From Isurus oxyrinchus (Eukaryota): a DNA stretch of 64,000 nucleotides. The position numbers and the translations under genes are program-made. The notes under the pieces are model-generated. The model saw only the letters and a program-made list of their open reading frames with translations. It made no database searches and was not told where the DNA came from. This document shows, in pieces, positions 1 through 62,051 of the stretch; position 1 is the stretch's first letter; every line of letters starts with the position of its first letter. The stretch covers positions 620,001 through 684,000 of the forward strand of contig JANJGN010000150.1 in assembly GCA_026770705.1 (NCBI GenBank). The letters are read 5' to 3'.

Positions 1-159
1 GACCTCCGACAGTATAGCACTCCCTCAGTACTGTCCCTCCAATAGTGCAACACTTCCACACTACTGACCCTCTGAGAGTGCAGCACTCCCTCAGCACGGA
101 GCGTTTATCTACATTATGGGACTGAATTCCCTGGAGTGAGACTCAGACCAGTGATTTAG

Positions 160-1420
160 GTAGGGTTGTGGGGGCTGGAGGAGGTTACAGCGATAGGGAG
201 GGCTGTAGAGGCTGTAGGAGGTTACAGAGAAAGGGAGGGTTGTAAGGGCTGTAGGAAGTTACAGAGATAGGGAGGGTTGTAGAGGCTGTAGGAGGTTACA
301 GAGATAGGGAGGGTTGTAGGGGCTGGAGGAGGTTACAGAAATAGGGAGGGCTGTAGAGGCTGTAGGAGGTTACAGAGATAGGGAGGGTTGTAAGGGCTGT
401 AGGAAGTTACAGAGATAGGGAGGGTTGTAGAGGCTGTAGGAGGTTACAGAGATGGGGGAGTTGTGGGGGCTGGAGGAGGTTACAGAGGTAGGGAGGTGTG
501 TAGGGGCTGTAGGAGGTTACAGAGATGGGGTGGTTGTGGGGGCTGGAGGAGGTTACAGATGTAGGGAGGGTTGTAGAGGCTGGAGGAGGTTACCAAAATA
601 GACACTGCTGTAGGGGCCACAGTAGGTTACAGAGATAGGGAGAGTTATAGTGTGGAGAGGAGCTTATAGAGTTCAGGAGGATTGTAGGGGCTGGAGGAGG
701 TTACAGTGATTGTGAGGGTTGTGGGGCCTGGAGGATTTTACAGAGATAGGGAGGGTTGTAGGGTCTGGAGCAGGTTACAGAGATAGGGAGGGTTGTAGGG
801 TCTGGAGCAGGTTACAGAGATAGGGAGGGTTGTAGGGTCTGGAGCAGGTTACAGAGATAGGGAGGGTTGTAGGGTCTGGAGGAGGTTACAGTGATCGTGA
901 GGGTTGTGGGGCCTGGGGGAGGTTACAGAGATAGGGAGTGTTGTGGGGACTGTAGGAGGTTACATAGATAGGGAGGGTTGTCGGGTCTGGAGGAGGTTAC
1001 AGAGATAGGGAGGGTTATAGGGACTGGAGGAGGTTACAGAGATAGGGAGGGTTGTAGAGACTGTAGGATGTTACAGAGATAGGGATTGTTGTAGGGGCTG
1101 GAGGAGGTTACAGAGATAGGGAGGGTTGTAGGGGCTGGAGGAGGTTACAGAGATAGGGAGGGTTGTAGGGGCTGGAGGATGTTACAGAGATAGGGAGGGT
1201 TGTAGGGGCTGGAGGAGGTTACAGAGATAGGGAGGGTTGTAGGGGCTGGAGGAGGTTACAGAGATAGGGAGGGTTGTACGGGCTGGAGGAGGTTACAGAG
1301 ATAGGGAGGGTTGTAGGGGTTGGAGGAAGTTACAGAGATAGGGAGGGTTGTAGGGGCTGGAGCAGGTTACAGAAATAGGGAGGGTTGTACGGGCTGGTGG
1401 AGGTTACAGAGATAGGGAGT
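160..1420. repeat. 37-bp G-rich minisatellite (GGGAGGGTTGTAGGGGCTGGAGGAGGTTACAGAGATA)n
   Basis: Direct tandem units visible. Confidence 0.95.
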
Positions 1421-22900: not shown

Positions 22901-25243
22901 AATTTATGTTTTATATATTCATTCTTCCATGGGAAGTGGGCATCACTGGCTAGGCCAGCATTTATGGCCCATCCCTAATTACCTTGAGAAGGTGGTGGTG
23001 AGCTGCCTTCCTGAACCTCTGCACTCCATGTGGTGTAGGTACACCCACAATGCAGTTAGAGAAGGAAGTCCAAGATTTTGACCAAGTGGCAGTGAAGGGA
23101 CGGCGATATATTTCAAAATCAGGATGATGTGTGGCTTGGAGGCGAACTTCCAGGTGGTGGTGTTCCCCTATGCCTGCTGCCCTTGTCCTTCTCAATGGTA
23201 GAGATCGTGGGATTGGAAGGTGCTGTTGAAGGAACCTTGCTGAGTTGCTGAAGGTCATGTTGTAGATGGGACACACTGCTGCCACTGTGCATTGACGATG
23301 GAGGGAGTGAGTGTTGCTGTGGTTGAGGGGGAGCCAATCAAGCGGGGCTGCTTTGTCCAGGGTGGTGTCGAGCTTTTGAGTGTTGTTGGAGCTGCACTCA
23401 TCCGGGCAAGTGGAGAGTATTCCATTCACACTCCTGCCTTGTGCTATGTTGATGATGGACAGGATTTGAGGAGTCAGGAGGTGAGTTACTCACCGCAGGA
23501 TTCCCAGCCTCTGAGCTGCTCTTGTAGCCACAATGTTTATGTGGCTGACCCAGTTCAGATTCTCGTCAATGGTAACCCCCAGGCTGTTGATATTCGGGGA
23601 TTCAGTGATGGTGCTGCCATTGAATGTCAAGGGGAGATGGTTAGATTCTCTCTTGTGTGCATTCAGATTAAGAACCTTTCTGTCTTTTCCCCATTTCCCC
23701 TACTCTGACCTTATTTGCTGGGACACTGGTTGATGCTGGTTTCAGTCTCAGTTTGTCTCAGTTGGTCACACTCTGGCCTCTGTCTCGAGACTAATGTTCC
23801 CTCTTGGTAGTGACAGTGATGGGGGTGTTGGGGAGGGTGTGGATATTGACCCCACTGCTCCCCCTCCCCCACTCCACCATTCTATCCTGGGATACCTGCC
23901 AGGATCCTTGTTCCAGCTGCAATGGGCAGCCCTTCCACACTTTCCTGTGGGCCCCGCACTTCATGTGTAAAAGCGCTAAGTTAGAGCAGGGATGGAGAAA
24001 TAAACAGAGGGCATGGGATGAGTGTGGGGGTCTCACAGCCAGAACTGATCCTGCCCTCAACTCTGTGGAAGGGGGGAGGTTTCACCAGCTCTCTGTCTTA
24101 ACAGCATCGTAACCACAGTGTGAAGATTGTCCCCATTCCCTGTATCTTAATAATATTGTAAAGACATCTGGGAGATAGCCTGCAGTCTCTGAAAAAGAAT
24201 TTGGTGTGTTTGCAGCACCACCACTGGCAAGAGAGTGTAAGTACAGTGTGACATGTTTACATGAGAAATTTTCATGATAAATGTGCACACAGGAATTTAC
24301 ATAATTTGTTGGGGAAATGCAATGACATGAATTAACAGATTGGAGCAGGAAGGTTGTCCCAGAGTAAGCTGTTTAATAAAAATATATCTGTACAGAGTTG
24401 TCTGGGCATTTCAATCCCTTGTGACAATAAATGTAATATTATAGAAAATGCAAAAGCTTCTTGTAATCTATCACAGAATAAACAAGTTGCAGAATTCAGA
24501 AAGCACATTCTGAAATGTTAACAAAATTCAGTGACGTCACATTTCTGCTAATTACTATTCGGCCATGTTGGCTGCACGCAGTCAGGCAGTCCCTCGGTTG
24601 TGAGGTGTCCACACAGCAGGACAGGGATGCATCAGCATCAAAGGACATGCTTAGTTGTTGCCGTGCAATGCATTTATTGCGAGCCTGTTGCACACACGCC
24701 CTGTCAAAGGAGCCTCCTTGGTTCCATTCTGAATCGAGGCAGGTCCAAGATACTACAACAACTTGCATTAACATAGCACCTTTAATGTAGCAAACTGTGC
24801 CAAAACTCTTTAGGGGATTGCTAACCACATATAAATCCATCTCTGAGACTCATAATGAGATATTAGGGACAGGTGACAAAAAGCTGAGTTAACAAAGCCA
24901 GTTAATAAGGACCATGTTAAATGAGGAGAGAGAGAGAGCGATAGACAGAGAAGCAGAGGGAGAGAGACAGGGAGAGAGAGAGAGCGATAGACAGAGAAGC
25001 AGAGTGAGAGAGACACAGAGAGAGATAGAGAGACAGGGACAGAGAGAGAGACACTGAATCTCTGTCCCCAATGACTCAGCATCAATTCGTTACTGGGGAA
25101 ACATCACCAACCACAGACCCATTCAGTCCCTTCCTCCCTCTCTCCCCCTCTCCCCCAGTGGGTTGCCTCATGTTCCAAGGAATCATAATCCCTGGCCACA
25201 CCCACAAACCTCCTCACCCCCTCTCCCCATTTCACACTCAATT

Positions 25244-25486
25244 TCACTTGAATCTGATCTGTGCGTATTCCGTCTCCTCTTCCCTGTGGACAGACCCATC
25301 ACCACTGGGCACCCTGAAGACTTGGGGATTGGCGTAGAGAAGGTCGGCGGGATTGTCAGGGTTCCCATGTCCAGCATCGCCTCCCACTGCACCTTCAGAG
25401 AGACCCCGGGGAGCTGGGGTCTCCCCCTCACTAGTTGTGTCTCTGGTTGTGTTCCGGGGCTCAGTAATCAGCACGTTCTGTTTACC
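25244..25486 (-). CDS. Orphan terminal cytoplasmic exon (LLYANP, TEYAQI ITSM), ends RFK*
   Basis: Phase-0 acceptor CTGTAG|GGT. Paralogue of gene C 61803-62051. Confidence 0.7.
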   Translation of the reverse strand, partial: GKQNVLITEPRNTTRDTTSEGETPAPRGLSEGAVGGDAGHGNPDNPADLLYANPQVFRVPSGDGSVHREEETEYAQIRFK

Positions 25487-25943
25487 CTACAGAGAAATGG
25501 AAACAGAAGATATCCTCACATCATTTACTGGCACTGATAGGGTTAAATTATTGTGCAGCCTCGTTACTGTCAGTCGTGGCTCAGTGGGTTTAACTCTCCT
25601 TCCCATGTCTTATGATAGAAACCACCTAAGGCATGTGCAGCACTCTCTCAGTACTGACCCTCCGACAGTGCAGTGCTCCCTCGGTACTGACCCTCCGGCA
25701 GTGCAGTACTCCCTCAGTACTGACCCTCCGGCAGTGCAGTACTCCCTCAGTACTGACCCTCCGACAATGCAGCACTCCCTCAGTACTGACCCTCTGTCAG
25801 TCTCGCACTCCCTCGGTAATGGCTCTGGCGAGTGACGGCTTGGATTCTGCACACAGGTGCCTGGTGTGAGGCTCAATAACATGCACCTTGTAATCAGAGA
25901 GAGGATGAGAGAGAGGGATAGAGATGAAGGGACAGAGACAGAG

Positions 25944-26701
25944 TGTTATGAATCTATTAATGTATGTAATGTAATTGGAAATTGTCTATTTAGACAGAAG
26001 TTCAGTCTGTGGGTATGTTTGTGTGTGTTTTAATTGGACTAAAGCCAGCCAGTCTGGGTACTTTGATGTATCATAGTTTTGAGATGTAAACAAAGAGGTA
26101 AAGTGGTAATTTGCATTTTTAAATAGAACATTCAATGTCGGGGGGTGAAATCTTAAACCAATCAACGTTTATATTACTAATAAAATTGAGACTGTGAAAG
26201 GGGATTTATTGTTAAAAGAGGTGTAGTTCAAAGGTCCTGATGATACAATGAGAATTTACATTCAAATAGAAGCGCTGGGTATAACTTGAGCAGTTTTGTG
26301 TGTGCAGAGCAGAGGCTTGTAACATCAAAGCAGCTGTAAGCCTGCACCTGTCTGCAAAGGAACCAAAGTGAAAGGAACCTCATTTGGAATTTGTGAGGTG
26401 AAAATGCTTTGCCTGGAATCTGCTTAAAGTCTATGGGTTGTCTTAGAGGAGATTAGTTTAAGAATTTGTTAAAAAGTTATGATAATACTAGTTTGTAGCC
26501 ATGTGCATATGTTTAACTTGTGTAAATTAATAAATGTCTCAAGTAGTTTGATATAAAACCATCTTGAGAACTGGTGGTCTTATTCCTGAATTTAAAGCTG
26601 CATCTCACACATTCCATTGGGAAATATAGGTTATGACAGTTGTTTAAAGTTTCCCTCTGGGATTTTAAACAACAGCCTTTACCAGTTGCTGTGTCATAAC
26701 A
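25944..26701 (+). mobile_element. Probable solo LTR (copies at ~29032-29786, ~60482-61230 and 63451-end)
   Basis: Inverted termini TGTTATGA...TCATAACA, internal AATAAA. Carried along in each tail-module duplication. Confidence 0.65.
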
Positions 26702-26836
26702 GAGAGACAGCATGGTACTGAACCATTGCTGACTCCACAGGTACAAATCAGTGGGTAACTGGGCTGGGAATCTGGGACATGTGTTGTCTACACACTGAGA
26801 TTGAAGCTTTGGAGTGAGTGTAAACAGTTCCTGTAC

Positions 26837-26918
26837 CTGGTGCTTCACAGAGAGTGGACTGGGGGTCAATGCAATGTCACTGGTCCCTGAAACTCTCTCC
26901 TCCATCGCTGTCTTTCTC
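26837..26918 (-). CDS. Orphan cytoplasmic exon 1 (RKTAMEERVSGTSDIALTPSPLSVKHQ)
   Basis: 82 nt, phase 2-0, AG/GT intact. Paralogue of 60265-60346. Confidence 0.65.
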
Positions 26919-28226
26919 CTGCAATAACACAATATCACACTGTGGTTATCATATAGCAGAGAGTCAGTGCAGCACAGACACAGAGCACACTGTAACCTTA
27001 CACCAATGACTCGACTGTCTCTTTAAATCACTTCTGCACAAAGCACAGAATTAAGAAGCTCGACACCATCCAGGACAAAGCAGCTCGATTGATCGACACC
27101 CCATCCCCCACATTAAACATTCACTCCCTCCACCATGAACACACAGTGGCAGCAGTGTGTGTACCATCTACAAGATGCACTGCAGCAACTCAGCAAGGCT
27201 CCTTCAACAGCACCTTCCAAACCCACGACCTCTACCATCTAGAAGGACAAGGGCAGCAGACACATGGGAACACCACCACCTGGAAGTTCCCCTCCAAGTC
27301 ACTCACCATCCTGACTTGGAAATATATCACTTCACTGTCACTGGGTCAAAACCCTGGATCTCCCTCTCTAACAGCACTGTGGGTGTACCTACACCACATG
27401 GACTGCAGCGGGTCAAGAAGGCAGCTCACCACCACCTTCTCAAGGGGCAATTAGAGATGGGCAATTAATAGCGGCCTCACCAGTGACAGCCACATTCGAT
27501 GAAAGAATTTAAAATCTCACAGCTCAGGAGGAAGCCACTCAGCCCATCGTGCCTGTGCTGGCCCTTTGAAAAAACTGACCAATTAGTCCCACTACCCAGA
27601 CTGTTCAATCATTCCTGATGGTTATAACCACCACTGTCGATGGACCCTCTGATTTACCATTCTGAATCGAGGCAGATCAACTTTCCTGCAACAACTTGCA
27701 TTTATATGGCACACTTAATGTAATAAACTGTCCCAAATCTCTTCAGGGGATTTTTACCTACATATAAATCCATCTCTGAGACACATAATGAGCTATTAGG
27801 GACAGGTGACAAAAAGCTGATTTCACAAAGCCAGTTAATAAGGACCNNNNNNNNNNNNNNNNNNNNNNNNNNNNNNNNNNNNNNNNNNNNNNNNNNNNNN
27901 NNNNNNNNNNNNNNNNNNNNNNNNNNNNNNNNNNNNNNNNNNNNNNNNNNNNNNNNNNNNNNNNNNNNNNNNNNNNNNNNNNNNNNNNNNNNNNNNNNNN
28001 NNNNNNNNNNNNNNNNNNNNNNNNNNNACTGAATCTCTGTCCCCAATGACTCAGCATCAAGTCGTCACTGGGGAAACATTTCATTCCAAACCACACCAAC
28101 CACAGACCCATTCAGTCCCTTCCTCCCTCTCTCCCCCTCTCCCCCAGTGGGTTGTCTCATGTTCCCAAGAATCTTCATCCCTGCCACCACCCACACACCT
28201 CCTGACCCCCTCTCCCCGTTTCACAC

Positions 28227-28475
28227 TCAGTTTCGCTTGAATCTGATCTGTGCGTATTCCGTCTGCTCTTCCCTGTGGACAGACCCATCACCACTGGTCA
28301 CCCTGAAGACTTGGGGATTGGTGTAGAGAAGCTCGTTGGGATTGTCAGGGTTCCCATGTCCAGCATCGCCTCTCACTGCACATTCAGAGAGACCCCGGGG
28401 AGCTGGGGTCTCCCCCTCACTAGTTGTGTCTCTGGTTGTGTTCCGGGGCTCAGTAATCAGCACGTTCTGTTTACC
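28227..28475 (-). CDS. Orphan terminal cytoplasmic exon (LLYTNP, TEYAQI), ends RFKRN*
   Basis: Open frame with intact acceptor. Second tandem copy. Confidence 0.7.
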   Translation of the reverse strand, partial: GKQNVLITEPRNTTRDTTSEGETPAPRGLSECAVRGDAGHGNPDNPNELLYTNPQVFRVTSGDGSVHREEQTEYAQIRFKRN

Positions 28476-29922
28476 CTACAGAGAAATGGAAACAGAAGAC
28501 ATCCTCACATCATTTACTGGCACTGATAGGGTTAAATTATTGTGCAGCCTGGTTAGTGTCAGTCGTGGGTCAGTGGGTTTAAACCTCTCTCACATGTCTT
28601 ATGAAAGAAAACACCTATGGCAGTGCAGTGCTCCCTCAGTACTGACCCTTCGATAGTGCAGCACTTCCTCAATGCTGACCATCCAACAGTGCAGCACTCC
28701 CTCAGTACTGACCCTCCAACAGTGCAGCGCTCCCTCAGTACTGACCCTCCAACAGTGCAGCGCTCCCTCAGTACTGACCCTCCGACAGTACAGGTCTTCC
28801 TCAGTACTGACCCTCTGACAGTGCAGCACTCCCTCAGTACTGACCCTCTGACAGTGCAGCACTCCCTCAGTACTGACCCTCTGTCAGTCTTGCACTCCCT
28901 CGGTAATGGCTCTGGCGAGTGTCGGCTTGGATTCTGCACTCAGGTGCCTGGTGTGAGGCTCAATAACATGAATCTTGTAATCAGAGAGAGGATGAGAGAG
29001 AGAGAGAGAGATGAAGGGTCAGAGACAGAGCGTTATGAATCTATTAATGTATGTATTGTAATTGGAAATTGTCTTTTTAAACAGAGGTTTAGTCTGTGGG
29101 TGTGTGTGTGTGTGTTTTAATTGGAATAAAGCCAGCCGTCTGGGTACTTTGATGTATAGTAGTTTTGAGATGTAAACAAAGAGGTAAAGAGGCATATTGC
29201 ATTTTTAAAAGGAGGATTCAAAGCCTGGGAGTGAATTCTTAAACCAATCAATGTTTATATTACTAATAAAATTGATACTATGAAACGGGATTTATTGTTA
29301 GAAGAGATGGAGATCAAAGGTCCTGATGATACAATGAGAATTTACTTACAAAGAGAAGCACTGGGTATAACTTGAGCAGTTTTGTGTGTGCAGAGCAGAG
29401 GCTTGTAACATCAAAGCAGCTGTAAGCCTACACCTGTCTGCAAAAGAACCAAAGTGAAAGGAACCTCATTTGGAATTTGTGAGGTGAAAATGCTTTGCTT
29501 GGAATCTGCTTAAAGTCTATGGGTTGTCTTAGAGGACGTTAGTTTGGGAATTTGTTAAAAAGTTATGATAGTACTAGCTTGTAGCCATGTGCATATGATT
29601 AACTTGTGAAAATTAATAAATGTCTCATGTAGTTTGATATAAACCCATCTCAAGAACTGATGGTGTTATTCCTGAATTTAGAGCTGCATCTCAAACATTC
29701 CACTGGGAAATATAGGTTATGACACTTGTTTAAAGTTTCCCTCTGGGATTTTAAACAACAGCCTTTAGCAGTCGCTGTGTCATAACAGAGAGACAGCATG
29801 ATACTGAACCATTGCTGACTCCACAGGTACAAATCAGTGGGTAACTGGGCAGGGAATCTGGGACACATGTTGTCTACACACTGAGATTGAAGCTTTGGAG
29901 TGAGTGTAAACAGCTCCTGTAC

Positions 29923-30004
29923 CTGGTGCTTCACAGAGAGTGGACTGGGAGTCAAGGCAATGTCACTGGTCCCTGAAACTCTCTCCTCCATCGCTGTCTT
30001 TCTC
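29923..30004 (-). CDS. Orphan cytoplasmic exon 1 copy
   Basis: 82 nt, phase 2-0, AG/GT intact. Confidence 0.65.
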
Positions 30005-31177
30005 CTGTAATAACACAATATCACACTGTGGTTATCATATAGCAGAGAGTCAGTGTAGCACAGACACAGAGCCCACTGTAATCTTAGACCAACGACTGGG
30101 ACTGTCTCTTTAAATCAGTTCTATACAAAGCACAGAATCAAGAAGCTTGACACCATCCAGGACAAAGCAGCCCGATTGATCTACACCCCATCCACCACAT
30201 TAAACATTCACTCCCTCCACAACGAACACACAGTGGAAGCAGTGTGTGTACCATCTACAAGATGCACTGCAGCAACTCAGCAAGGCTCCTTCAACAGCAC
30301 CTTCCAAACCCACGACCTCTACCATCTAGAAGGACAAGGGCAGCAGACACATGGGAACACCACCACCTGGAAGTTCCCCTCCAAGTCACTCACCATCCTG
30401 ACTTGGAAATATATCATCGTTCCTTCACTGTCGCTGGGTCAAAATCCTGGAACTCCCTCCCTAACAGCACTGTGGGTGTACCTACACCACATGGACTGCA
30501 GCGGGTCAAGAAGGCTGATCACCACCACCTTCTCAAGGGCAATTAGGGATGGGCATTAATGCTGGCATCACCAGTGACAGCCACATTCGATGTAAGAATT
30601 AAAAATCTCACAGCACAATGTATTTATTGGGATCCTCCTGCACACACGCCCTGTCGAAGGACCCTTTGTGGTTCCATTGTTAATCGAAGCAGATCAGACT
30701 TACTGCAACTACTTGCATTTATATAGCACCTTTAATGTAGCAAAATGTCCCAAGGCTCATCCGGGAATTGTTAGTCACATCTTCACCTGACTCTGAGGCA
30801 CATGAGGAGATATAAGGGACAGGAGACCAACAGCTGAGTCAACAAAGTCAGTTATTAACGGGCATCTTAAAGGAGGAGCTGGAGATAGAGAATGAGTGAC
30901 AGACACAGAAAGAAAGACAAAGAGAGGGAGAGAGAGAACAAGAGAGCGAGAGAGAGAGAGAGAGAGACAGAGAGAGACAGTGAATCTCTATCCCCAGTGG
31001 CTCAGCATCCAGTCCTCTCTGGAGAAGCATTTCATTCCAAACCACACCAACCGCAGCCCAATCCCATCCCTTCCTCCCTCTCTCCCCCTCTCCCCCAGTG
31101 GGTTGTTTCCTGTTCCCAGGAATCTCAATCACTACCCCCACCCCCACACCTCCTCACTCCCACTCCCCATTTCTCAT

Positions 31178-31426
31178 TCAGTTATGCTCGAACCTGATCT
31201 GTGCGTATTCCGTCTCCTCTTCCCTGTGGACAGACCCATCATCACTGGACATCCTCAATACTTGGGGATTGGCGTAGAGAAGGCCGTCGGGATTGTCGAT
31301 GTGCCAATGTCCAGCATCGCCTCCCAATGCACCTTCAGAGAGACCCCGGGGAGCTGGGGTCTCCCCCTCGCTAGTTGTGTCTCTGGTTGTGTTCCGGGGC
31401 TCAGAAATCAGCACGTTCTGTTTACC
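31178..31426 (-). CDS. Orphan terminal cytoplasmic exon (LLYANP, TEYAQI), ends RFEHN*
   Basis: Open frame with intact acceptor. Closest to the gene C terminal exon. Confidence 0.7.
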   Translation of the reverse strand, partial: GKQNVLISEPRNTTRDTTSEGETPAPRGLSEGALGGDAGHWHIDNPDGLLYANPQVLRMSSDDGSVHREEETEYAQIRFEHN

Positions 31427-31569
31427 CTACAGAGAAATGGAAACAGAAGACATCCTCACATTATTTACTGGCACTGATAGGGTTAAATTAATGAGCAGCC
31501 TCGTTAGTGTCAGTCTTGTCTCAGTGGGTTTAACCCTCTCTCTCATGTCATCTGAAAGAAACCACCTAT

Positions 31570-32619: not shown

Positions 32620-32704
32620 AGGGAGCAGCACAGGAAGAGGTCATTCAGCCCAAGCAGAGCGTGTGGGCAGTTCCTCCCCAGGCGAGCAGTCGGACAGGTC
32701 CTGG
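32620..32704 (+). other. Copy of the 85-nt exon upstream of the gene B leader; possible 5' UTR exon
   Basis: ACACAG|AGGGAGC...TCCTGG|GTAAGT, matching 8024-8108. Confidence 0.5.
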
Positions 32705-33154: not shown

Positions 33155-33194
33155 ATGATCGGGAAATCTTACTTCCTCCTGTCACTTCTCCAAG
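33155..33194 (+). CDS. Gene B signal-peptide exon (coding part; acceptor at 33113)
   Basis: ATG, MIGKSYFLLSLLQ, CAAG|GTAATA. Confidence 0.85.
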
Positions 33195-36695: not shown

Positions 36696-37085
36696 TAGGA
36701 ACCACTGCCTTAGACACTGAGGATCTAGGACAGCTAGGCCAATTCATGATTCATGATGGTGATAATGGGGGAATTCTGAAGGCTCCTAATCCATTGTCCT
36801 AGTTTGTAAATCAGCAGTGAACTCACTTCAATTAGTGTGTCTTGTAGACACTGTGTTGGGTGGAAGACTGGATTCACTAAACAGGTTCCTGAGGGCCACG
36901 AGCCAATGTAGAATGAACTTGTCCACTCCTGTATCCAGGATTCTCTTCAATGTGTTGTGAAACATTGGGGCATTCATTGTGAGTCCAGACTGCAGCCACT
37001 GTGCCCCAGTGATGGAGGGGGTGGATTTTGAGTCTAGTGGATTGACAAAACATTCAGGGTTAAATATTGATATTTCTCCCCCTAG

Positions 37086-37451
37086 TTGGACTACCACAAG
37101 TGTGGAAAGGTGACACTCCACGAGAGGTGACAGCGCAGGAAGGTTCGTGTGTACAGATTCCGTGTCATTACAGCTACCCATCATATTTAGTACCGAGATC
37201 ACCTGTTGGAATCTGGTATATGAGACGGAATTGGGAAACATGGTCTATAGCCTTTCACTCCAAGGATCACAGTCGCGAGTTACCACGGTTCCACCATCGG
37301 ACCCGGCTTTCTGGAGACCTGAAAGATGGTGACTGTTCCCTGATTATAAACAACATCAGACGGGAAGATGCAGGATATTATTTATTCAGAACAGATTTTG
37401 ACAGCAGGAATAGATACAACGACCGTCCTGAAACCCAGCTTCATGTTTCTG
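37086..37451 (+). CDS. Gene B V-set exon V1
   Basis: 366 nt, phase 1-1. GSCVQIPC, DCSLIINNIRREDAGYYLFR (Arg retained), divergent loops. Confidence 0.92.
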
Positions 37452-38329
37452 GTAAGTGCTGTGTTATAATTACTCAACAATTCACATCCAACACTCAATG
37501 GGAAATAATAGTGTTTGATTTGCTTGTTTTTTGGCCGTGTTAACCAGCGTCACTATTTTTAATGATTTGTCTATTTCTGCTCCCAGATCCATGAGCTTAT
37601 TGTGTGTGATTGAATCCACATCATAGCTGTAACGTAAACCGAGCTGAGGGGTGATGACACCTCCCCCCTGAGTGAAGTGTCTCCTCCCCACTACACCATC
37701 CACCCCTCACACTGTCTGTGTAATCTCCCGTCCCATCCCCAGCCTCTCTTTCCCCTCCAAAGTCCTGCAACGTGTTTCCATCTCCCGAATCCGTTCCCAT
37801 CTTTCCCGGAACTCCATGTTTGAATCCCTCCAATCAGGTTCCCACCCCAGCCACTGTGCTGAAACAGCTCTTATTTTTATTGAGCCAATGCCAAGCCCCG
37901 ATACCGAGCGAGAGCCTCCTCATTTGCTGAGTTTAAGGTGATGAGTCAGCCCCTTAGTCCGTAGAGGGGATTCTCCTCGGTAATGTGCAGCCTTGTTTGT
38001 GTCTCTCCACAAGCGCATGAGGGGTTTGTACAGAGGCTGCAGCGCTGGAGGGGGTCTGCACAGGGGTCCTGGCCTGTCCTGAGCCAGTTTTAGCAAGGAC
38101 AACTCTGGCCTTGGCAGCTGAAAGCCAGCCATTGGACAGACGGGGCCTGACACAAGGAGCCTGTTAGTCACTACCCCCCGTGTCTCCTGTGCTCAGATCC
38201 AGACCATGTTGGCTGGTGGATCTGGCTCAGGAAGGGTCCTCCCCATGGGACCCCCAGAGGGAAGGTGGGTCGAGCGGGTCAGTCACTTCATGTTTATTCT
38301 GCAGCTTTAATATTTTAGGAAGGTAAGAA

Positions 38330-39060
38330 TGTAGGAACATAAGAAATAGGGACAGGAGCAGGCCATTCGGTCCCTCCAGCCTGCTCTCACTGATCTGGTT
38401 GCGGCCTTAACTCCATTTTCCTGCTTGTCCCCCAAACCGTTGACTCCCTTGTCGATCAAAAACCTGCCTCACTCAGCCTTGAGTCTATTCAATGGCCCAG
38501 CCTCCACTGCTCTCTGGGGAAGAGAATTCCACAGGCTAGCGCCCCTCTGAGAGAGGAAATTCCTCCTCATCTCAGTCTTAAATGGGAGAGCCCTCATTCC
38601 GAAACTGTGCTCCCTGGTTCTAGATTCCCCCACGAGGGGGAAACATCCTCCCAGCATCCACCCTGTCAAGCCCCCTCGGAATCGGATATGTTTCAATAAG
38701 GTCACCCCTCATTCTTCTAAACTCCAATGGATACAGGCCCAACCTGCTCAACATTTCCTCACAGGACAAACCCTTTAATCCCAGGAATCAGCCCAGTGAA
38801 GCTTCTCTGAACTGCCTGTACACAATGATCCTGTTACAATCTCACTAACACCCTGTGCAGCTGCTGCAAGACTTCCCTCCTTTTATACTCCATCCCTTTG
38901 CAATAAAGGCCAACATTCCACTTGCCTTCCTCATTCCGTGGTGTTCCTGAATGCTGACTTTCTGTGATTCATGTACCAGGACACCCAGATCCCTCTGTAC
39001 TGCATTCTGCAGCCTGTCTCCATTTAAATTATATCCTGTTTTTCTATTCTTCCTGACAAT
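38330..39060 (-). mobile_element. CR1 LINE 3' fragment (paralogous copy at 53660-54430)
   Basis: QRDLGVLVHESQK and FKTEMRRNFLSQR peptides. Confidence 0.85.
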
Positions 39061-39180
39061 ATAATTTGTTGCCATTCTCCTCAGTATTGACCATCCCCCC
39101 AATTCAGCCTCATCTGTAAATATCGGGTTCAGTGGATCCACAAACCATTCAGAGTTAAATATTGAGATTTCACTCCCCAG

Positions 39181-39546
39181 CTGAACCCTCGCAAGAGTGG
39201 AAAGGTGACACTCCACGAGAGGTGACAGTGCAGGAAGGTTCCTGTGTACAGATTCCATGTCATTACAGTTATCCATCGTGTCTGGAAAACCAACCGTGAG
39301 GTGGAGTCTGGTTTAATAATGAGGAATGGAGAACATCGTCTATAGCCTTTCACACCAAGGATCACAGTCACGAGTTACCACGGTTCCACCATCGGACCCG
39401 GCTGTCTGGAGACCTGAAAGATGGCGACTGTTCCCTGATTATAAACAACATCAGACGGGAAGATGCGGGTCCTTATTTTTTCAGAATAGAATTTGACAAT
39501 GGTCCGAGCCATAACTATTACCCTGTAACCCAGCTTCACGTTTCTG
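39181..39546 (+). pseudogene. Gene B V2 exon, inactivated
   Basis: CGA->TGA stop at 39297-39299 and donor changed to G|ATAAGT. Confidence 0.88.
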
Positions 39547-40274
39547 ATAAGTGCTGTGTTATAATTACTCAACAATTCACATTCAACACTCAATGGGAAA
39601 TAACACAAACTGTGACGTTTACGTATTAACACAAAACACAGCTTATTATAACACACTGTCTGATTCTCAATAACCTGGTGATAGCTTCCAGTTCACTCCT
39701 AAAGCAACCTCTAATACTCACTTTAATATCAATGATTAAATGTATTGACTGTGTCCATCAATGTTATCAGGTTATCCACTCCTATCGATCTCTCTAATCC
39801 TGACTCGAAGTCTGACTTAGCGACAGAAGAAAGATTCACATTTCTGTAGCACCTTTCACCACCTCAGCATGGACCAAATCACTTCACAGCCAATGAGCTG
39901 ATTCCTGAATTGTAGTTACTATTGTAATGTGGGAAACACAGCAACCAATTTGCACACAGCAAGCTCCCACAAATTGCAAAGTAAAAAATGGCCCAGATCG
40001 CTGAGGGACTGATGGGTTAGTGCACTCCAAACTCTGGTCTGCTCCACCACCCTCACCCACTATTATCAGTTCAAGTGTCTCGGAGTGAACGTGTATTAAG
40101 CTGAGAGACAGAAACACCAAAGTCTCAAAGCAGGAAATTCTCTCCTAATCATTGTAACCTCTCAGATCTGATATCATCCTTGTAAAAGTGCTTTTTCTTG
40201 TGGGACTGTGATTTCTATTTGAACTGATGCTTCACGTTATATTTCTCTAAAAGGATCCATTCTCTGTCTGTTAG

Positions 40275-40571
40275 ATTTCACAGATAAACCCACGATATTC
40301 CCTGCTGAAATTATTGCAGGAAAGCCTGTGGATGTAAGCTGCACCTTCAACACAACGTGCAATGGAACAGCAGCACCTGTCTTAACCTGGGACACTCCCA
40401 CTGACGTACCTGGATCAGTCTCAAACACTGTAACTCAGCATGGTGTCACTCTGACCTATACTTCTGTTCTGACCCTGATCCCATCACTCAAACACCACGG
40501 ACACACTCTCAGCTGCAGAGTGAGATATCCATCTGTTTCATCGGAGCGGACCCTCATACTAACTGTGCAAG
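40275..40571 (+). CDS. Gene B Siglec domain-2 type C Ig exon
   Basis: 297 nt, intact, almost identical to gene A 12766-13062. Donor G|GTTAGT. Confidence 0.9.
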
Positions 40572-40894
40572 GTTAGTTTGGACACCCTTCATTCTACATC
40601 AGCACTCCCTCAGCGCTGACCCTCTGACAGTGCAGCCCGTTCTCAGTGTCCACATTCTCATGCCTCTCAAAGTGCTTCACAGTCGATAGAAGTTAACTGA
40701 TCTTTATTTGATTGTTGCTGAATGAAGAGACAAGCTGTCTAAACTTTACATCTCACACACATTATTTTCCATGGCAACACCTCCTCCAATCAGTGACCAC
40801 TTGCTGATTAACCAGCACTCTCTTCCCTTTAAATATAAATTGTTGTTCACTTTCTGTTGGTAAACCTGCAATCTGTCTTGTTGAGTCCGGTCCT

Positions 40895-41032
40895 GACATC
40901 TGAATATCACAATGAACAGAACAAGTTCCAACAATGAGCTGTGGTTGGTGATTCCTGGAGACTGGAGACTATCAGTGTGCTCAGAGAATGAACATGGAGC
41001 AGTGGAGGGGTTCATAACCATCACTGTGGAAC
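40895..41032 (+). pseudogene. Gene B C2 exon remnant (5' half and acceptor lost, internal deletions)
   Basis: Only the MNRTSSNNELWLVIP...ENEHGAVEGFITITVE part is recognisable, with deletions relative to 10227-10508. Confidence 0.8.
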
Positions 41033-42153
41033 GTTAGTTAAGACAAACTTCAACATCTCTCTCAGATTGAAACACTACAAAAACACACATAAATATCCAG
41101 CCTTAAATAGACACCTGCAGACACACAATCCCACATCTATGAGCACACACAAAGACATACTCACAAACAAACACACTAGCACATACTCCCCTGTGGATTA
41201 CCTGACCTCCCTCAGTGCTGCACCGGAGAGTTGACCTGGATTCTGGGATTTGTGTTCCCTTTCATATTTATGGAAGAATATGGAAATTGCAAAGTCTATT
41301 ACAGACACTCAGATGCACAGAGATACTCACAGATACTCTCTGCCTCTCCAACTCTCTATCCTACTTTAAGAACCTTCCTGAAATCTAACTCTTTGACCAG
41401 TCACCAGTCCCAATTCCTCCTTACGTGATTTTCTGTGAAATTTTGTTTGAGTATCTGAGAGTAAGAGGGAAGTGGAGAGGTTTAGGAAGGGAATTCCTGT
41501 TGCTGAAAAGCTTACATCAAGTTCTCAGCTTTCCAGTGCCCATTTTTCACATGATGTCCAATGTCCTTGTTCATAATGGAGATTGCCTATGTAAACGTCA
41601 CGCTGTAGTTACACTCTCCCACCAGTGGTAGCACGGTCGCACTTAACCCTTGCATCTCCAAGCTTTTCAAGCAATTTCACTTCCTAATTTCCTACTATTC
41701 ACCTCAACCATTCCCTGTGGGAGCGAGTTCCACATTCTCCCCTCTCTCTGGGTAAAGATTGGAACTGTTTATTAAGCGGGGGGTGTAAGTCTGTGGGGGA
41801 GTCCATCTCGATCCTGCCCGATTCGCACACGCGTCCGAGATGGATTTCCACCCGGCACTAAACGTTTCCAGAATTTTCTACAGCACAATCCTGTACACAG
41901 CGATGGAGAGAAACATTGGACAGGGAGTCCAACAGCACAATGATCCATTCTCACCAATGTTCCACGCTAAGGGGAAAGTTCCGATTGTCCACTCTTAGAG
42001 TGTTTACAATGAAAACATTCATTCCACATTGAATCCCAGTGGATGGGTCAATATTACAGCAAATGTTGCAGTGATATGAAGCTTGATTGTTCAGCCAGAG
42101 TGAGAGATTGAAAGCGGAGAGTCAGTGATGATTTCTTTCTGTGTGTTCTCTAG

Positions 42154-42293
42154 ACAGTGGAGGAGAGATTCTGCACGTGATCCTGATCCTGGGAATACGA
42201 GCTGTGATATTCCTTGTGCCTGTGGTTATCACTATCGCTGGAGTCTGTGTCTGGGAGAGACAAACAGTGAAAGGAAGTCGACAGACTGTTTGA
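42154..42293 (+). CDS. Gene B terminal TM exon with intramembrane Arg and short tail (activating type)
   Basis: Polypyrimidine TCTCTAG acceptor, phase 1. SGGEILHVILILGIRAVIFLVPVVITIAGVCVWERQTVKGSRQTV*. Arg codon at 42198-42200. Confidence 0.82.
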
Positions 42294-42409
42294 AGCTTTG
42301 TACAGCAACAATCTGGTCAGTCAGTGCGGACAAATAACGTGTGATGTTGGGTTAAGTTGTAATGAAACTGGTCAGTGTCCTGGTTAGAATCACCTTCGTA
42401 TCAGAGAGG

Positions 42410-43010
42410 CATTCCAGCACAGTGGGAGCCCATTCAGCCCATTGAGTCCATGCTGCCTCTCTGTAAAGCAATACAGTCAGTCCCATTCCCCCGCTCTATC
42501 CCCGTATCTCTGCAAGTTTATTTCCCCTCAAGTGTCCATCCAATTTCCTTTTGAAATCGTTCATCGTCTCAACTTCCACCATCCTCGTAGGCAGCGAGTT
42601 CCAGCTCATTACCACTCGCTGTGTAAAAAAGTTCCTCCTCACATCGCCCCTCTGCCCAAAACCTTCAATCTGTGTCCCCCAGTCCTTGTCTCATCAGCTA
42701 ATGGCAACAGCTTCTCTTTGTCTGCCTTATCTAAACCCATCATCATCTTGTACACCTCGATCAGATCCCCCCTCAATCTCCTTTGCTCCAAGGAGAACAA
42801 CCCCAGCTTCTCCAACCCAACCTTGTAGCTAAAATCCCTCATCCCTGGACCCATTCTGCTCAATCTCCTCCCCACCCTCTCAAGGACCCTCACTTCCTTC
42901 CCAAAGTGAGGAGACCAGAACTGGACACAATACTCTAGTTGTGACATAACCAGAGCTTTATAAATGTTCAGCATAACCTCCCTGTGTTTGTTCTCAATCC
43001 CTCGATTTAT
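42410..43010 (-). mobile_element. CR1 LINE 3' fragment in the gene B 3' UTR region
   Basis: LEYCVQFWSP...LGLFSLEQRRLRGDLIEVYK. Confidence 0.85.
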
Positions 43011-43370
43011 GAAAAGCTTATTCTTTCCATCAGCACAAACAGCAATTTCCAAGCGGACTCCCATCAGCAGACAGAGTGCAATGAAACATCGGCATGCCTG
43101 CTTCTTAATGTACGGAGAGAAACCTGGAACGAGAGATTCTCCTTCTTCTCCTCAGCAAGCTGAAACTTTTCCTTATACCTGGTGCTCCCCAGTCCTGCTG
43201 TGTGGACACATCATAACCACGGCATTGTCTGGCTGTGTGCAGCCAACATGGTCGAATAGGAATGAACAGAAATGTGACGTTGCTAAACTCTGTTCTCTGA
43301 TTGGAATGTGCTTTCTGAATGCTGCACCTTTTTCATGCTGCGATAGATTGTAAGAAGCATTTGTGTTATG

Positions 43371-43376
43371 AATAAA
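43371..43376 (+). terminator. Candidate polyadenylation signal of gene B
   Basis: AATAAA just after a block homologous to the putative 3' UTR at 24.4-24.6 kb (minus). Confidence 0.4.
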
Positions 43377-43729
43377 ATTACATTGATTTACTCAAGTGAT
43401 TAAAATGCTCAGCCTGTTCTGTAAATATTTATAGATTAAAATTCTTATTTTGAAGCCAAATTTTTGGCTCAAAGACATTACTTCATGTTGTCACATTTGT
43501 TCTATCATACAAATTCCTGTGCCCATCTTTATAATGGAAATTTCCCATGTAAACATGTCACATTGTAGTTTCACACTCCTGCCAGTGGTGGTGCCATTCC
43601 AAAGCTGTCTTGCTGCACCAAACTGAGAAATATTCTCGACGTGTACATGATGTTGTTGTTACACGGACATCAGGCGGAACCTTGGGCAGTGCCTAGAATG
43701 CACTTAGGACAGTGCAGACCACGCTCAGA

Positions 43730-45555: not shown

Positions 45556-45831
45556 ATAACAGGGATCGTTGAAATGTATCATAAGGCCAGAGACCTGTAT
45601 TGGGAACTCTTATCGCCTGAGTTTCAGCCTCCGAGGTGAGGGGGAGGAGTCTAATCCCACGGAGCCAATGGAGAAGCTTGATGACTACAGCTGCCCAAAT
45701 ATGAGCTGACAGATCATCACATGGTAAACGTTTTGCTGAGAGCACAAAACATCCTCGATCTTCTCACTGGTTACCCACTTCCTCATTTTATCTCACAGTG
45801 ACACATCAACCCTTTCTAATTAAACACACAG

Positions 45832-45916
45832 AGGGAGCAGCACAGGAAGAGGTCATTCAGCCCAAGCAGAGCGTGTGGGCAGTTCCTCCCCAGGCGAGCA
45901 GTCGGACAAGTCCTGG
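45832..45916 (+). other. Copy of the 85-nt exon upstream of the gene C leader; possible 5' UTR exon
   Basis: Same cassette with intact AG and GTAAGT. Confidence 0.5.
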
Positions 45917-59191: not shown

Positions 59192-59288
59192 GTAGAGACT
59201 CCAGTAAATGGACAGTAGGATTGTTCACGGCTGGGATCATGTTGAGTGTTTTCCTGGCTGGAATCTTCATCTTCATCTGTGTCAGAAA
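59192..59288 (+). CDS. Gene C transmembrane exon (uncharged)
   Basis: 97 nt, phase 1-2. RDSSKWTVGLFTAGIMLSVFLAGIFIFICVRK, donor GTAAGT. Confidence 0.88.
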
Positions 59289-60346: not shown

Positions 60347-61802
60347 GTACAGGAACTGTTTACACTCACTCCAAAGCTTCAATCTCAGTGTGTAGACAAC
60401 ACGTGTCCCAGATTCCCAGCCCAGTTACCCACTGATTTGTACCTGTGGAGTCAGCAATGGTTCAGTATCATGCTGTCTCTCTGTTATGACACAGCAACTG
60501 GTAAAGGCTGTTGTTTAAAATCCCAGAGGGAAACTTTAAACAACTGTCATAACCTATATTTCCCAGTGGAATGTTTGAGATGCAGCTCTAAATTCAGGAA
60601 TAAGACCACCAGTTCTCGAGATAGTTGTATATTAAACTACATGAGACATTTATTAATTTACACAAGTTAAACATATGCACATGGCTACAAACTAGTATTA
60701 TCATGACATTGTAACAAATTCTCCAGCTAACCTCCTCTAAGACAACCCATAGACTTTAAGCAGACACAAGGCAAAGCATTTTCACCTCACAAATTCCAAA
60801 TAATGTTCCTTTCACTTTGGATCCTTTGCAGACAGGTGTAGGCTTACAGCTGCTTTGATGTTACAAGCCTCTGCTCTGCACACACAAAACTGCTCAAGTT
60901 ATACCCAGTGCTTCTCTTTGAATGTAAATTCTCATTGTATCATCAGGACCTTTGAACTCCACCTCTTCTAACAATAAATCTGATTTCATAGTATCAATTT
61001 TATTAGTAATATAAACGTTGATTGATTTAAGATTTCACTCCCAGGCATTGAATGCTCTATTTAAAAATGCAAATTGCCTTTTTACCTCCCTGTTTACATC
61101 TCAAAATTACTTTATATCAAAGCACCCAATTAATCCAAATAAAACACACACAGACACATCCACAGATGAAACCTCTATTTTAACAAAAATAATTTCCAAA
61201 AACATGATATTCATTAATCGCATCATGACAGTCTCTGTCTCTATCCCTACGTCCCTTTCTTTCTCTCTCTCTCTCTCTCTCTCATCCTGTTGCTGATTAC
61301 TAGTTTCATGTTATTGAGCCTCACACCAGACACCTGAGTGCAGAATCCAATCTGTCACTCACCAGAGCCATTACCGAGGGAGTGCGGGACTGACAGCAGG
61401 TCAGTACTGAGGGAGTGCTGCACTGTCAGAGGGTCAGTACTGAGGGAGTGCTGCACTGTCAGAGGGTCAGTACTGAGGGAGTGCTGCACTGTCAGATGGT
61501 CAGTACTGAGGGAGTGCGAGACTGACAGAGGGTCAGTAATGAGGGAGTGTGAGACTGACAGAGGGTCAGTAATGAGGGAGTGTGAGACTGACAGAGGGTC
61601 ACTATTGAGGATGTGCTGCACAGTTGGGGGGGTCAGTACTGAGGGAGCACTGCACTGCCATAGGTGGTATCTTTCAGATGACATGAGAGAGAGGGTTAAA
61701 CCCACTGAGACAAGACTGACACTAATGAGGCTGCTCAATAATTTAACCCTATCAGTGCCAGTAAATGATGTGAAGATGGCTTCTGTTTCCATTTCTCTGT
61801 AG

Positions 61803-62051
61803 GGTAAACAGAACGTGCTGATTACTGAGCCCCGGAACACAACCAGAGACACAACTAGTGAGGGGGAGACCCCAGCTCCCCGGGGTCTCTCTGAAGGTGC
61901 AGTGGGAGGTGATGCTGGACATTGGCACATCGACAAACCTGAAGAGTTTCTCTACGCCAATCCCCAAGTTTTGAGGGTGTCCAGTGGTGATGGGTCTGTC
62001 CACAGAGAAGAGGAGACGGAATACGCACAGATCAGGTTCGAGCATAACTGA
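61803..62051 (+). CDS. Gene C terminal exon with FLYANP and TEYAQI (ITSM)
   Basis: Phase 0. GKQNVLITEPR...EEFLYANPQV...EEETEYAQIRFEHN*. TxYxxI as in the distal motif of CD33-related Siglecs. Confidence 0.85.
   Translation, partial: GKQNVLITEPRNTTRDTTSEGETPAPRGLSEGAVGGDAGHWHIDKPEEFLYANPQVLRVSSGDGSVHREEETEYAQIRFEHN

What the first reader, a model, noticed from the sequence alone, without database searches (positions are those of the whole stretch)
42154..42293. Activating-type TM exon hidden from the ORF track (ILILGIRAVIFLV...)
Seen: a strong acceptor in phase 1, a hydrophobic span of about 25 aa interrupted by Arg in its N-terminal part, a stop in the same exon and no tyrosine. It is unrelated to the TM exons of genes A and C. 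Established: an intramembrane Arg or Lys mediates pairing with FcR-gamma (LILRA, GPVI, OSCAR) or DAP12 (Siglec-14, -15, -16). Inference: gene B signals through an ITAM adaptor.
Basis: partly seen in the sequence, partly recalled or inferred. Interest (0 to 1): 0.85.

Follow-up and report, generated by a model that had tools for sequence, protein, structure and literature searches.

The report
Shark Siglec-like receptor arginine membrane exon
This is a real, spliced exon that gives a shark Siglec-like immune receptor a membrane anchor with a buried arginine and almost no tail, the usual build of an activating receptor that signals through a separate adaptor chain. The same exon type is already in automatic annotation of other sharks.

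Summary
Window 42154-42293 follows a pyrimidine-rich AG acceptor. In phase 1 it encodes (D)SGGE-ILHVILILGIRAVIFLVPVVITIAGVCVW-ERQTVKGSRQTV-stop: one Arg, no Tyr.

Contigs from four runs in four studies, under two organism labels, carry the GT..AG joint 40571|42154.

One correction: the exon is not terminal. It runs to 42315, has a GT donor at 42316, and is spliced to a 3'-UTR exon starting at 43034.

The same cassette (invariant ILGIRAxIF...G.CV) closes automatically predicted (RefSeq) proteins in seven shark species. They are Siglec-like, CD22-like, single-V and SLAM-like. Tails are always 6-17 residues without Tyr. Relatives with an uncharged anchor have tails of 55-194 residues, nearly all with Tyr. 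Neighbouring genes A and C have the uncharged, tyrosine-motif type.

Adaptor pairing fits all of this but is untested. The arginine's position in the outer part of the anchor favours an FcR-gamma/zeta-like partner over DAP12.

Gene B here has a dead V2 exon and a relic Ig exon. It also has a unique Pro in the anchor, so this copy may be decaying.

The scan found this cassette before on other DNA of this genome. It is a new member of a known kind.

The parts
33155..33194 (+). Gene B leader exon, coding part: MIGKSYFLLSLLQ plus one base (phase 1), with a GT donor at 33195.
   Evidence: Read directly. It was located through a leader-to-V1 loose end and the pattern search. The same 13 residues open many shark Siglec-like RefSeq proteins.
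37086..37451 (+). Gene B V1 exon: Siglec/CD22-type V-set domain, 366 nt, phase 1-1, intact, carrying YYLFR with the canonical Arg.
   Evidence: AG at 37084-5 and GT at 37452-3. Pfam V-set 52.3 bits and Ig_CD22 37.1 bits, both above their cut-offs. The 3' part is identical to the V1 of great white P0017.
39181..39546 (+). Gene B V2 exon, defective: in-frame TGA at 39297-39299 (CGA in paralogues) and donor GT changed to AT at 39547-8.
   Evidence: Read directly. Every contig covering 39297 reads C, not T, so this copy of V2 is not seen in RNA.
40275..40571 (+). Gene B C2-set exon: 297 nt, phase 1-1, intact. Its last base G starts the codon GAC (Asp), which the next exon completes.
   Evidence: Read directly. 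Pfam C2-set_2 33.6 bits. An 850-nt contig covers it with 2 differences and joins it to the TM exon. It is 98% identical to great white P0096.
40895..41037 (+). Relic of an Ig_3-type exon: the 5' half is missing, there is an internal deletion, and the donor is lost. The transcript skips it.
   Evidence: 84% identical to gene A exons at 10.2-10.4 and 11.5-11.7 kb. Sequence. Paralogue contigs diverge at the deletion (loose ends 40956 and 41034). The joint 40571|42154 bypasses it.
42154..42315 (+). The exon in question: transmembrane segment with Arg (42198-42200), a 12-residue tail, stop TGA at 42291-42293, then 22 nt of 3' UTR before a GT donor at 42316.
   Evidence: The joint 40569->42152 (GT..AG, cut +2) is in contigs of X1, X8, X5 and X6. 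It matches the C-termini of 8 representative shark proteins at E 1e-13 to 4.5e-4.
43034..43400 (+). 3'-UTR exon: AG acceptor at 43032-3 and AATAAA at 43371-43376. The end coordinate is approximate.
   Evidence: The X8 and X5 contigs continue from 42315 with 30 letters that match 43034-43063 exactly. Sequence.

Best explanation
The stretch is the coding part of the penultimate exon (42154-42315) of gene B, a shark Siglec-like receptor gene. The exon supplies the membrane anchor, a single buried arginine, and a 12-residue cytoplasmic stub with no signalling motif.

It is one copy of a strongly conserved 'Arg-TM cassette' (ILGIRAxIF...T..G.CV). Sharks attach this cassette to Siglec-like, CD22-like, single-V and SLAM-like ectodomains.

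By analogy with every studied receptor of this build, the arginine would dock onto the paired aspartates of a disulphide-linked dimeric adaptor inside the membrane. The adaptor's ITAM would then carry the signal. That would make gene B the activating counterpart of its neighbours A and C, which have closely related ectodomains, uncharged anchors and tyrosine-motif tails.

The residue is Arg rather than Lys and sits in the outer part of the span, about 18 residues from the cytoplasmic end. I therefore rank an FcR-gamma/zeta-type partner (RDD motif) above DAP12 (central Lys), roughly 50:30, with 20 for another partner.

Shown: the exon, its frame, its splicing and transcription, the conservation of the cassette, and its link with short tails. 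Inferred: adaptor binding, the adaptor's identity, and activating function.
For: - Splicing: the joint 40571|42154 is in contigs of four runs from four studies under two organism labels. One 850-nt contig runs C2 exon, then TM exon, then the downstream exon with 3 differences in 460 nt. The continuation is placed at 43034.
- Frame: the C2 exon ends in phase 1, so the hydrophobic frame is the one read.
- Conservation: a search of 1.84 billion representatives found 8 proteins with this segment at the very C-terminus (E 1e-13 to 4.5e-4). They come from Scyliorhinus torazame, Chiloscyllium punctatum, Hemiscyllium ocellatum, Rhincodon typus and Mustelus asterias. Further carriers are in S. canicula and Carcharodon carcharias.
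- Invariant positions: across 13 distinct sequences L-9, I-4, L-3, G-2, I-1, R0, A+1, I+3, F+4, V+8, G+14, C+16 and V+17 never vary.
- Tail link: all natural carriers have tails of 6-17 residues without Tyr. Uncharged anchors in the same family have tails of 55-194 residues, nearly all with Tyr.
- Neighbours: genes A and C have uncharged anchors plus tails with SVYGNL or LYANP/TEYAQI motifs.
- Ectodomain similarity between B and its neighbours: V1 88% to gene C, C2 95.6% to gene A.
- Established rule: a basic TM residue docks on an acidic pair. Arg couples to zeta-zeta or gamma-gamma, and a central Lys couples to DAP12 (review PMC13107469).
- Adaptor in the genome: an earlier, unchecked note reports a transcribed FcR-gamma gene in this genome.
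Against: - No adaptor was examined and no binding test was run.
- Siglec-14 uses Arg with DAP12, so residue type does not settle the partner.
- Akula et al. 2014 (PMC4016189) reported no FcR-gamma in sharks.
- Gene B in this window has a nonsense codon and a lost donor in V2, and a relic Ig exon.
- It has Pro at +7 from the Arg, where all 12 other distinct cassette sequences have A, I or V.
- It has Pro in C2 (40326 C), where every transcript and homologue has Arg.
- The V1->C2 or V1->V2 junction of this gene was not seen among the joints listed.
Confidence: 0.65

Rival explanations
1. Transcribed but decaying copy. The exon type is functional in sharks, but gene B in this haplotype is a pseudogene or null allele. 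Its mRNA would either include the V2 exon with the TGA and be degraded, or make a receptor whose anchor is impaired by the Pro substitution.
For: - V2 has TGA at 39297 and an AT in place of the GT donor.
- There is a relic Ig exon at 40895-41037.
- The anchor has a unique Pro at +7.
- C2 has a unique Pro at 40326, where all four runs and all homologues read Arg.
- The great white relative P0017 keeps an intact V2 between V1 and C2.
- No V1->C2 joint was listed.
Against: - The leader, V1, C2 and TM exons are all open, with consensus splice sites and matching phases, so skipping V2 keeps the frame.
- A lost donor usually causes exon skipping.
- The resulting L-V-C2-TM(Arg) build equals annotated 270-273-residue proteins of S. 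canicula and C. carcharias.
- The C2-TM-UTR part is transcribed and correctly spliced at 99% identity.
Confidence: 0.22
2. Real receptor, but the arginine does not recruit an ITAM adaptor. It might pair with a DAP10-like YxxM chain or another membrane partner, or serve as a retention/degradation signal that keeps surface levels low, making the receptor a decoy.
For: Unassembled basic TM residues act as quality-control signals in TCR chains (PMC13107469). The adaptor repertoire of sharks is poorly documented (PMC4016189). The cassette is conserved well beyond the Arg, which shows a specific partner but does not name it.
Against: In all studied vertebrate receptors, a single TM Arg or Lys with a stub tail couples to ITAM or YxxM adaptors. 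The strict link of the cassette with loss of tyrosine tails is what the paired activating/inhibitory design predicts.
Confidence: 0.1
3. Chance open frame. A hydrophobic reading of a non-coding or UTR exon, with the true frame being another one.
For: Another frame (42125-42337) is also open across the exon. The frame after the TGA stays open for about 107 codons into the next exon.
Against: The phase of the C2 donor fixes the frame. The peptide is conserved at 65-93% in other sharks at protein C-termini, with the stop a few residues after the same point. Contigs under the second organism label (B) carry a 1-nt insertion just after the stop, so the downstream frame is not conserved. Such a frame arises by chance at about 0.2% of AG sites.
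Confidence: 0.02

Closest known systems
RefSeq (Gnomon) models of shark Siglec-like proteins ending in the same cassette: Carcharodon carcharias 'Siglec 12' (P0016, P0017) and 'CD33-like' (P0019), and Scyliorhinus canicula 'Siglec 13/14' (P0011, P0012)
   Same: Same C2 exon followed by the same Arg-TM exon. TM identity to the window is 93% (P0016/17), 89% (P0019) and about 80% (catsharks). They have the same short tail...TVKGSRQTV. P0017 shares the distinctive V1 stretch YYLFRTDFDSRNRYNDRPETQLH.
   Different: The window copy has Leu for Gln at -5, Pro for Ala at +7 and Arg for Gly at +20 relative to P0017. Its V2 exon is dead, so at best it makes V1-C2-TM rather than V1-V2-C2-TM. None of these models has been studied experimentally, as far as the library searched shows.
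Mammalian activating Siglecs (Siglec-14, -15, -16, mouse Siglec-H), which pair with DAP12
   Same: They have a Siglec-type V-set with the essential Arg plus a C2-set domain, one basic residue in the anchor, and a stub tail. Like Siglec-5/14, the gene sits beside inhibitory paralogues with near-identical ectodomains.
   Different: The anchor sequence is unrelated. The shark Arg lies in the outer third of the span. The partner is unknown. The shark cassette is shared with non-Siglec families. Shark relatives carry two tandem V domains.
Leukocyte-receptor-complex receptors with an Arg-TM that pair with FcR-gamma (LILRA, OSCAR, GPVI, Fc-alpha-RI, NKp46, KIR2DL4 and macaque activating KIR)
   Same: Arg, not Lys, lies near the outer face of the membrane, as in the RDD assembly motif (PMC13107469). 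One anchor type has spread among several receptor families by recombination, as with macaque KIR3DS taking the KIR2DL4 anchor (PMC8102735, abstract).
   Different: Those ectodomains are C2-type only, and there is no sequence similarity between the anchors. FcR-gamma pairing in sharks is unproven.
Teleost activating forms of NITR, LITR and DICP receptor families
   Same: The same design principle in a non-tetrapod: multigene Ig receptor clusters with inhibitory (ITIM) and activating (charged TM, short tail) members. This is established knowledge and was not tested here.
   Different: They belong to different Ig families and have different anchors. No homology was found: the HMMER search with the exon returned only shark proteins, plus one weak repetitive hit.

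Membership tests
Siglec / CD22-like Ig lectins (ectodomain of gene B) | N-terminal V-set domain of the Siglec/CD22 type | tested here: met
   V1 exon: Pfam V-set 52.3 bits (cut-off 26) and Ig_CD22 37.1 bits (cut-off 27).
Siglec / CD22-like Ig lectins (ectodomain of gene B) | Conserved F-strand arginine that binds the sialic-acid carboxylate, and the Siglec cysteine pattern (C-x5-C in strand B, Cys in strand E, extra Cys in domain 2) | tested here: met
   V1 reads SCVQIPCHYSYP...GDCSLIINN...YYLFR. C2 reads VSCTFNTTCNGT...LSCRV. These were compared with the family pattern from memory, not by structure.
Siglec / CD22-like Ig lectins (ectodomain of gene B) | Binds sialylated glycans | not testable with these tools
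   Needs a glycan array or Fc-fusion binding assay.
Adaptor-coupled (activating-type) immunoreceptors | Single basic residue inside the membrane span | tested here: met
   Arg at 42198-42200 is residue 11 of a 29-residue hydrophobic run. It is invariant in 13 distinct cassette sequences.
Adaptor-coupled (activating-type) immunoreceptors | Short cytoplasmic tail without ITIM, ITSM or ITAM | tested here: met
   The tail is ERQTVKGSRQTV, with no Tyr. All carriers have tails of 6-17 residues without Tyr.
Adaptor-coupled (activating-type) immunoreceptors | The exon is expressed and joined in frame to the ectodomain | tested here: met
   The joint 40571|42154 is seen in four runs from four studies. 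The upstream V1 junction of this copy was not seen.
Adaptor-coupled (activating-type) immunoreceptors | Physical, Arg-dependent association with an acidic-TM signalling dimer (FcR-gamma, zeta, DAP12 or DAP10) | not testable with these tools
Shark Arg-TM cassette (ILGIRAxIF...G.CV) | All invariant positions of the cassette, placed at the protein's C-terminus | tested here: met
   The window has all 13 invariant residues and the stop 23 residues after +17. HMMER gives E 1e-13 to the best carrier.
Shark Arg-TM cassette (ILGIRAxIF...G.CV) | Small or aliphatic residue (A/I/V) at +7 from the Arg | tested here: not met
   The window has Pro (CCT, 42219-42221). The 12 other distinct sequences have A (8), I (2) or V (2).

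The most novel reading that the evidence does not exclude
Galeomorph sharks use one deeply conserved Arg-TM exon as a universal 'activating plug'. Exon shuffling has moved it onto at least four unrelated Ig receptor types: Siglec-like, CD22-like, single-V and SLAM-like. Conservation of a whole helical surface, not just the Arg, would mean a single dedicated adaptor, probably the FcR-gamma chain that an earlier survey reported as absent from cartilaginous fish. That would put Arg-based adaptor coupling of paired receptors at the base of jawed vertebrates.
Probability: 0.4. Interest if true: 0.55.

Novelty: new member of a known kind. Interest (0 to 1): 0.38.

Why it matters
It shows that the paired inhibitory/activating design of Siglec clusters exists in sharks. 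In mammals, that design has an activating twin with a buried basic residue and a borrowed signalling chain. In sharks it uses an anchor unrelated to the mammalian ones.

The anchor is shared among several receptor families, so it is a convenient handle for two tasks. One is cataloguing all activating receptors of a shark genome. The other is identifying which adaptor chain cartilaginous fish use.

For this particular locus the value is modest. The exon type is already in public automatic annotation, and the scan has met it before elsewhere in this genome.

Tried and rejected
- Pfam on the exon peptide gave no family, as expected for an anchor.
- blastn and tblastn of the exon against the window found no second copy.
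- I considered that the TGA is a recent truncation of a longer tail, because the frame stays open for about 107 codons into the 3' exon. I rejected this. All carriers in seven species stop within 6-17 residues of the anchor. Organism-B contigs have a frameshifting +T right after the stop. The downstream frame has no ITIM.
- I considered that the V2->C2 joint (39546->40275) seen in all runs shows that gene B includes V2. I rejected it as evidence for this copy. Every contig reads C at 39297, where B has T. The longest such contig differs from B at 15 of 300 positions, clustered in the CDR1-like loop, so it comes from paralogues.
- The region-restricted word search with P0001's anchor returned only 3 proteins and missed known carriers, so it is not a census.
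- Literature searches for shark or cartilaginous-fish Siglecs, DAP12 or FcR-gamma found no description of this receptor type.
- No complex prediction was run, because no adaptor sequence from a tool was available and I did not type one from memory.
- The spliced model was never joined.

Full report
**What is in the sequence**

The window is vertebrate DNA holding a cluster of Siglec/CD22-like genes. Six V-set exons score above Pfam's V-set cut-off, and the five intact ones also pass the Ig_CD22 cut-off. Earlier notes and my protein hits point to a shark close to the great white.

At 42152-42153 an AG follows 17 pyrimidines in 20 bases. Reading from 42154 in phase 1 gives (G)AC = Asp, then SGGE-ILHVILILGIRAVIFLVPVVITIAGVCVW-ERQTVKGSRQTV and TGA at 42291-42293. 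The hydrophobic run has 29 residues. The only charge in it is Arg (CGA, 42198-42200) at residue 11. The tail has 12 residues and no Tyr.

The best 19-residue hydropathy mean is 2.77. This is one of 22 segments in all six frames of the window that reach 2.3, and most of the others are low-complexity or interrupted by stops. Only 17 of 8,995 AG sites open a comparable frame by chance.

**Is the exon used?**

One search found runs that hold the region. I laid four of them, from four studies and two organism labels, on 36900-42640.

- All four carry a contig with the joint 40569->42152, ends GT..AG with the cut two places to the right.
- The shorter side of the joint is 27 to 164 letters.
- In run X8, one 850-nt contig covers the whole C2 exon (2 differences) and the whole TM exon (1 difference), and then continues for 390 letters.
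- The first 30 of those letters match 43034-43063 exactly, just behind an AG.

So the exon runs from 42154 to 42315, has a GT donor at 42316, and is spliced to a 3'-UTR exon with AATAAA at 43371-43376. The stop lies 22 nt before the last junction, which is compatible with a stable mRNA.

The runs are only guessed to be RNA, but GT..AG-spliced contigs in four small assemblies are hard to explain otherwise. Contigs cannot show levels or ends.

**Frame**

The C2-set exon (40275-40571, 297 nt; Pfam C2-set_2 33.6 bits) ends with the first base of a codon. The hydrophobic frame is therefore the one entered.

Another frame is open across the exon. The frame behind the TGA stays open for about 107 codons into the 3' exon. 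Neither is conserved. Contigs under the second organism label (B) carry an extra T directly after the stop. All relatives end within a few residues of the same point.

**Gene B as a whole**

Exons were handled one at a time.

| Exon | Coordinates | State |
|---|---|---|
| Leader | 33155-33194 | MIGKSYFLLSLLQ, phase 1 |
| V1 | 37086-37451 | Intact; Siglec cysteine pattern and YYLFR |
| V2 | 39181-39546 | TGA at 39297-9 where paralogues have CGA; AT for the GT donor |
| C2 | 40275-40571 | Intact |
| Relic Ig exon | 40895-41037 | Truncated, donor lost |
| TM | 42154-42315 | The exon in question |
| 3' UTR | from 43034 | AATAAA at 43371-43376 |

All coding exons are phase 1-1, so skipping V2 keeps the frame and would give 280 residues.

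I did not see the V1 donor joined to anything among the joints listed. The V2->C2 joints in the runs come from paralogues. Every contig reads C at 39297, and the longest differs from B at 15 of 300 positions. Whether this copy makes L-V1-C2-TM mRNA is therefore inferred, not shown.

**Neighbours**

The exon has no relative in the window. Gene C's anchor exon is 59192-59288, and gene A's is 8962-8864 on the minus strand. Both are uncharged and related to each other. Both are followed by tail exons with tyrosine motifs:

- SVYGNL in gene A (6726-6613);
- LYANP and TEYAQIRFEHN-stop in gene C (61779-62048).

The TEYAQI motif recalls the distal TEYSE[IV] motif of CD33-related Siglecs; this is from memory. 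B's ectodomain exons are 88% (V1, to gene C) and 95.6% (C2, to gene A) identical to those of its neighbours. This is the layout of a paired inhibitory/activating receptor cluster.

**Relatives elsewhere**

A full HMMER scan of 1.84 billion representative proteins with the 45-residue peptide gave nine hits. Eight carry the segment at the very C-terminus. They are RefSeq or GenBank predictions from five shark species:

- Scyliorhinus torazame ('CD33-like', 'Siglec 12', and a hypothetical SLAM-like protein);
- Chiloscyllium punctatum ('Siglec 13', 'CD22-like');
- Hemiscyllium ocellatum ('CD22-like');
- Rhincodon typus (a 171-residue single-V 'sialoadhesin-like' protein);
- Mustelus asterias ('SLAM family member 9-like').

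Further searches added S. canicula 'Siglec 13/14' (272-273 residues, L-V-C2-TM) and Carcharodon carcharias 'Siglec 12' and 'CD33-like'.

The closest anchors are the great white ones (93%). One of those proteins, P0017, shares B's distinctive V1 stretch but keeps an intact V2.

Across 13 distinct cassette sequences, thirteen positions never vary, including the Arg. Among 58 family members with a recognisable anchor:

- every natural cassette carrier has a tail of 6-17 residues without Tyr;
- uncharged anchors have tails of 55-194 residues, nearly all with Tyr;
- a stingray protein has a different Arg-anchor with an 11-residue tail.

**How it most likely works**

The established rule is that one basic residue in a receptor's anchor docks on the paired acidic residues of a dimeric signalling chain. 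Arg pairs with zeta-zeta or gamma-gamma (RDD), and a central Lys pairs with DAP12 or CD3 dimers (KDD). Placement of the basic residue alone suffices for assembly (PMC13107469).

The shark residue is Arg and lies about 18 residues from the cytoplasmic end. I therefore favour an FcR-gamma/zeta-like partner over DAP12, without being able to decide. Siglec-14 is a counter-example, since it uses Arg with DAP12.

A 2014 survey found no FcR-gamma in sharks (PMC4016189). An earlier follow-up of this scan reports a spliced, transcribed FcR-gamma gene in this same genome. I did not check that note.

Conservation of many anchor positions besides the Arg argues for a specific packing partner.

**Doubts about this copy**

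Besides the dead V2 and the relic exon, B has two unusual residues.

- Pro at +7 from the Arg, where all 12 other distinct cassette sequences have Ala, Ile or Val.
- Pro in C2 (40326 C), where all four runs and all homologues have Arg.

These may be private to the assembled haplotype, or they may be signs of relaxed constraint. I give about 0.2 to the reading that this copy is a transcribed pseudogene or null allele.

**Novelty**

The kind is known: an activating paired receptor with a basic anchor residue. The exon type is already modelled in RefSeq for other sharks.

The scan has reported the same cassette on other DNA of this genome. Follow-ups there reached the same reading, including reuse by three receptor families.

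I found no paper describing it in the library searched.

- direct splice evidence;
- the correction that the exon is penultimate;
- the full gene model with its lesions;
- the inhibitory nature of the neighbours;
- the unique Pro.

I score it as a new member of a known kind, of moderate-to-low interest.

Noticed in passing
window 25241-31546, minus strand: Orphan tail-exon modules. Three copies of the last cytoplasmic exon (31546-31181, 28499-28230, 25510-25241, with TEYAQIRF) alternate with two copies of the juxtamembrane exon (30024-29899, 26938-26813). No Ig or anchor exon lies upstream of them on that strand. They look like relics of an inverted, tandemly duplicated gene C-type 3' end.
   Followed up: partly
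window 19854-19777 (-), 32624-32704 (+), 45824-45916 (+): A copy of the gene A-type juxtamembrane exon (STGRGHSAQAERVGSSSPGEQSDRSW) lies about 450-540 bp upstream of the leader exon of each of genes A, B and C. The duplication unit of the cluster therefore seems to start inside the previous gene's tail.
   Followed up: no
window 40326 and 42219-42221: There are two window-specific proline codons in gene B. At 40326 the window has C (Pro), where contigs of all four runs read G (Arg, as in all homologues). CCT at +7 of the anchor is unique among 13 distinct cassette sequences. This could be a private haplotype, an assembly error or decay.
   Followed up: partly
window 42294-42315 plus 43034-43353: The reading frame stays open for about 107 codons after the TGA, through the 3'-UTR exon, with no ITIM. 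Organism-B contigs have a +T behind 42296, so it is probably chance.
   Followed up: partly
window 1-2000 with the Siglec-like genes from about 6 kb on: Hepcidin gene copies (earlier notes) lie next to the Siglec-like cluster. This recalls the human HAMP-MAG-CD22 neighbourhood on 19q13. If the synteny holds, the shark cluster sits at the ancestral MAG/CD22 position. The human gene order is from memory and was not tested.
   Followed up: no
window 12.0-12.6, 25.6-25.8, 28.6-28.9, 31.5-32.3, 43.7-45.5, 61.4-61.7 kb: Arrays of a 33-bp satellite, which reads ..PLTVQHSLSTD.. in one frame, flank and separate the receptor genes. They account for many long spurious ORFs.
   Followed up: no
P0092 (Hypanus sabinus 'Siglec 10'): A stingray family member has a different Arg-containing anchor (ILLISLAVRGVLFLLATVAVI) with an 11-residue tail. 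Batoids may therefore have an independent activating anchor.
   Followed up: no
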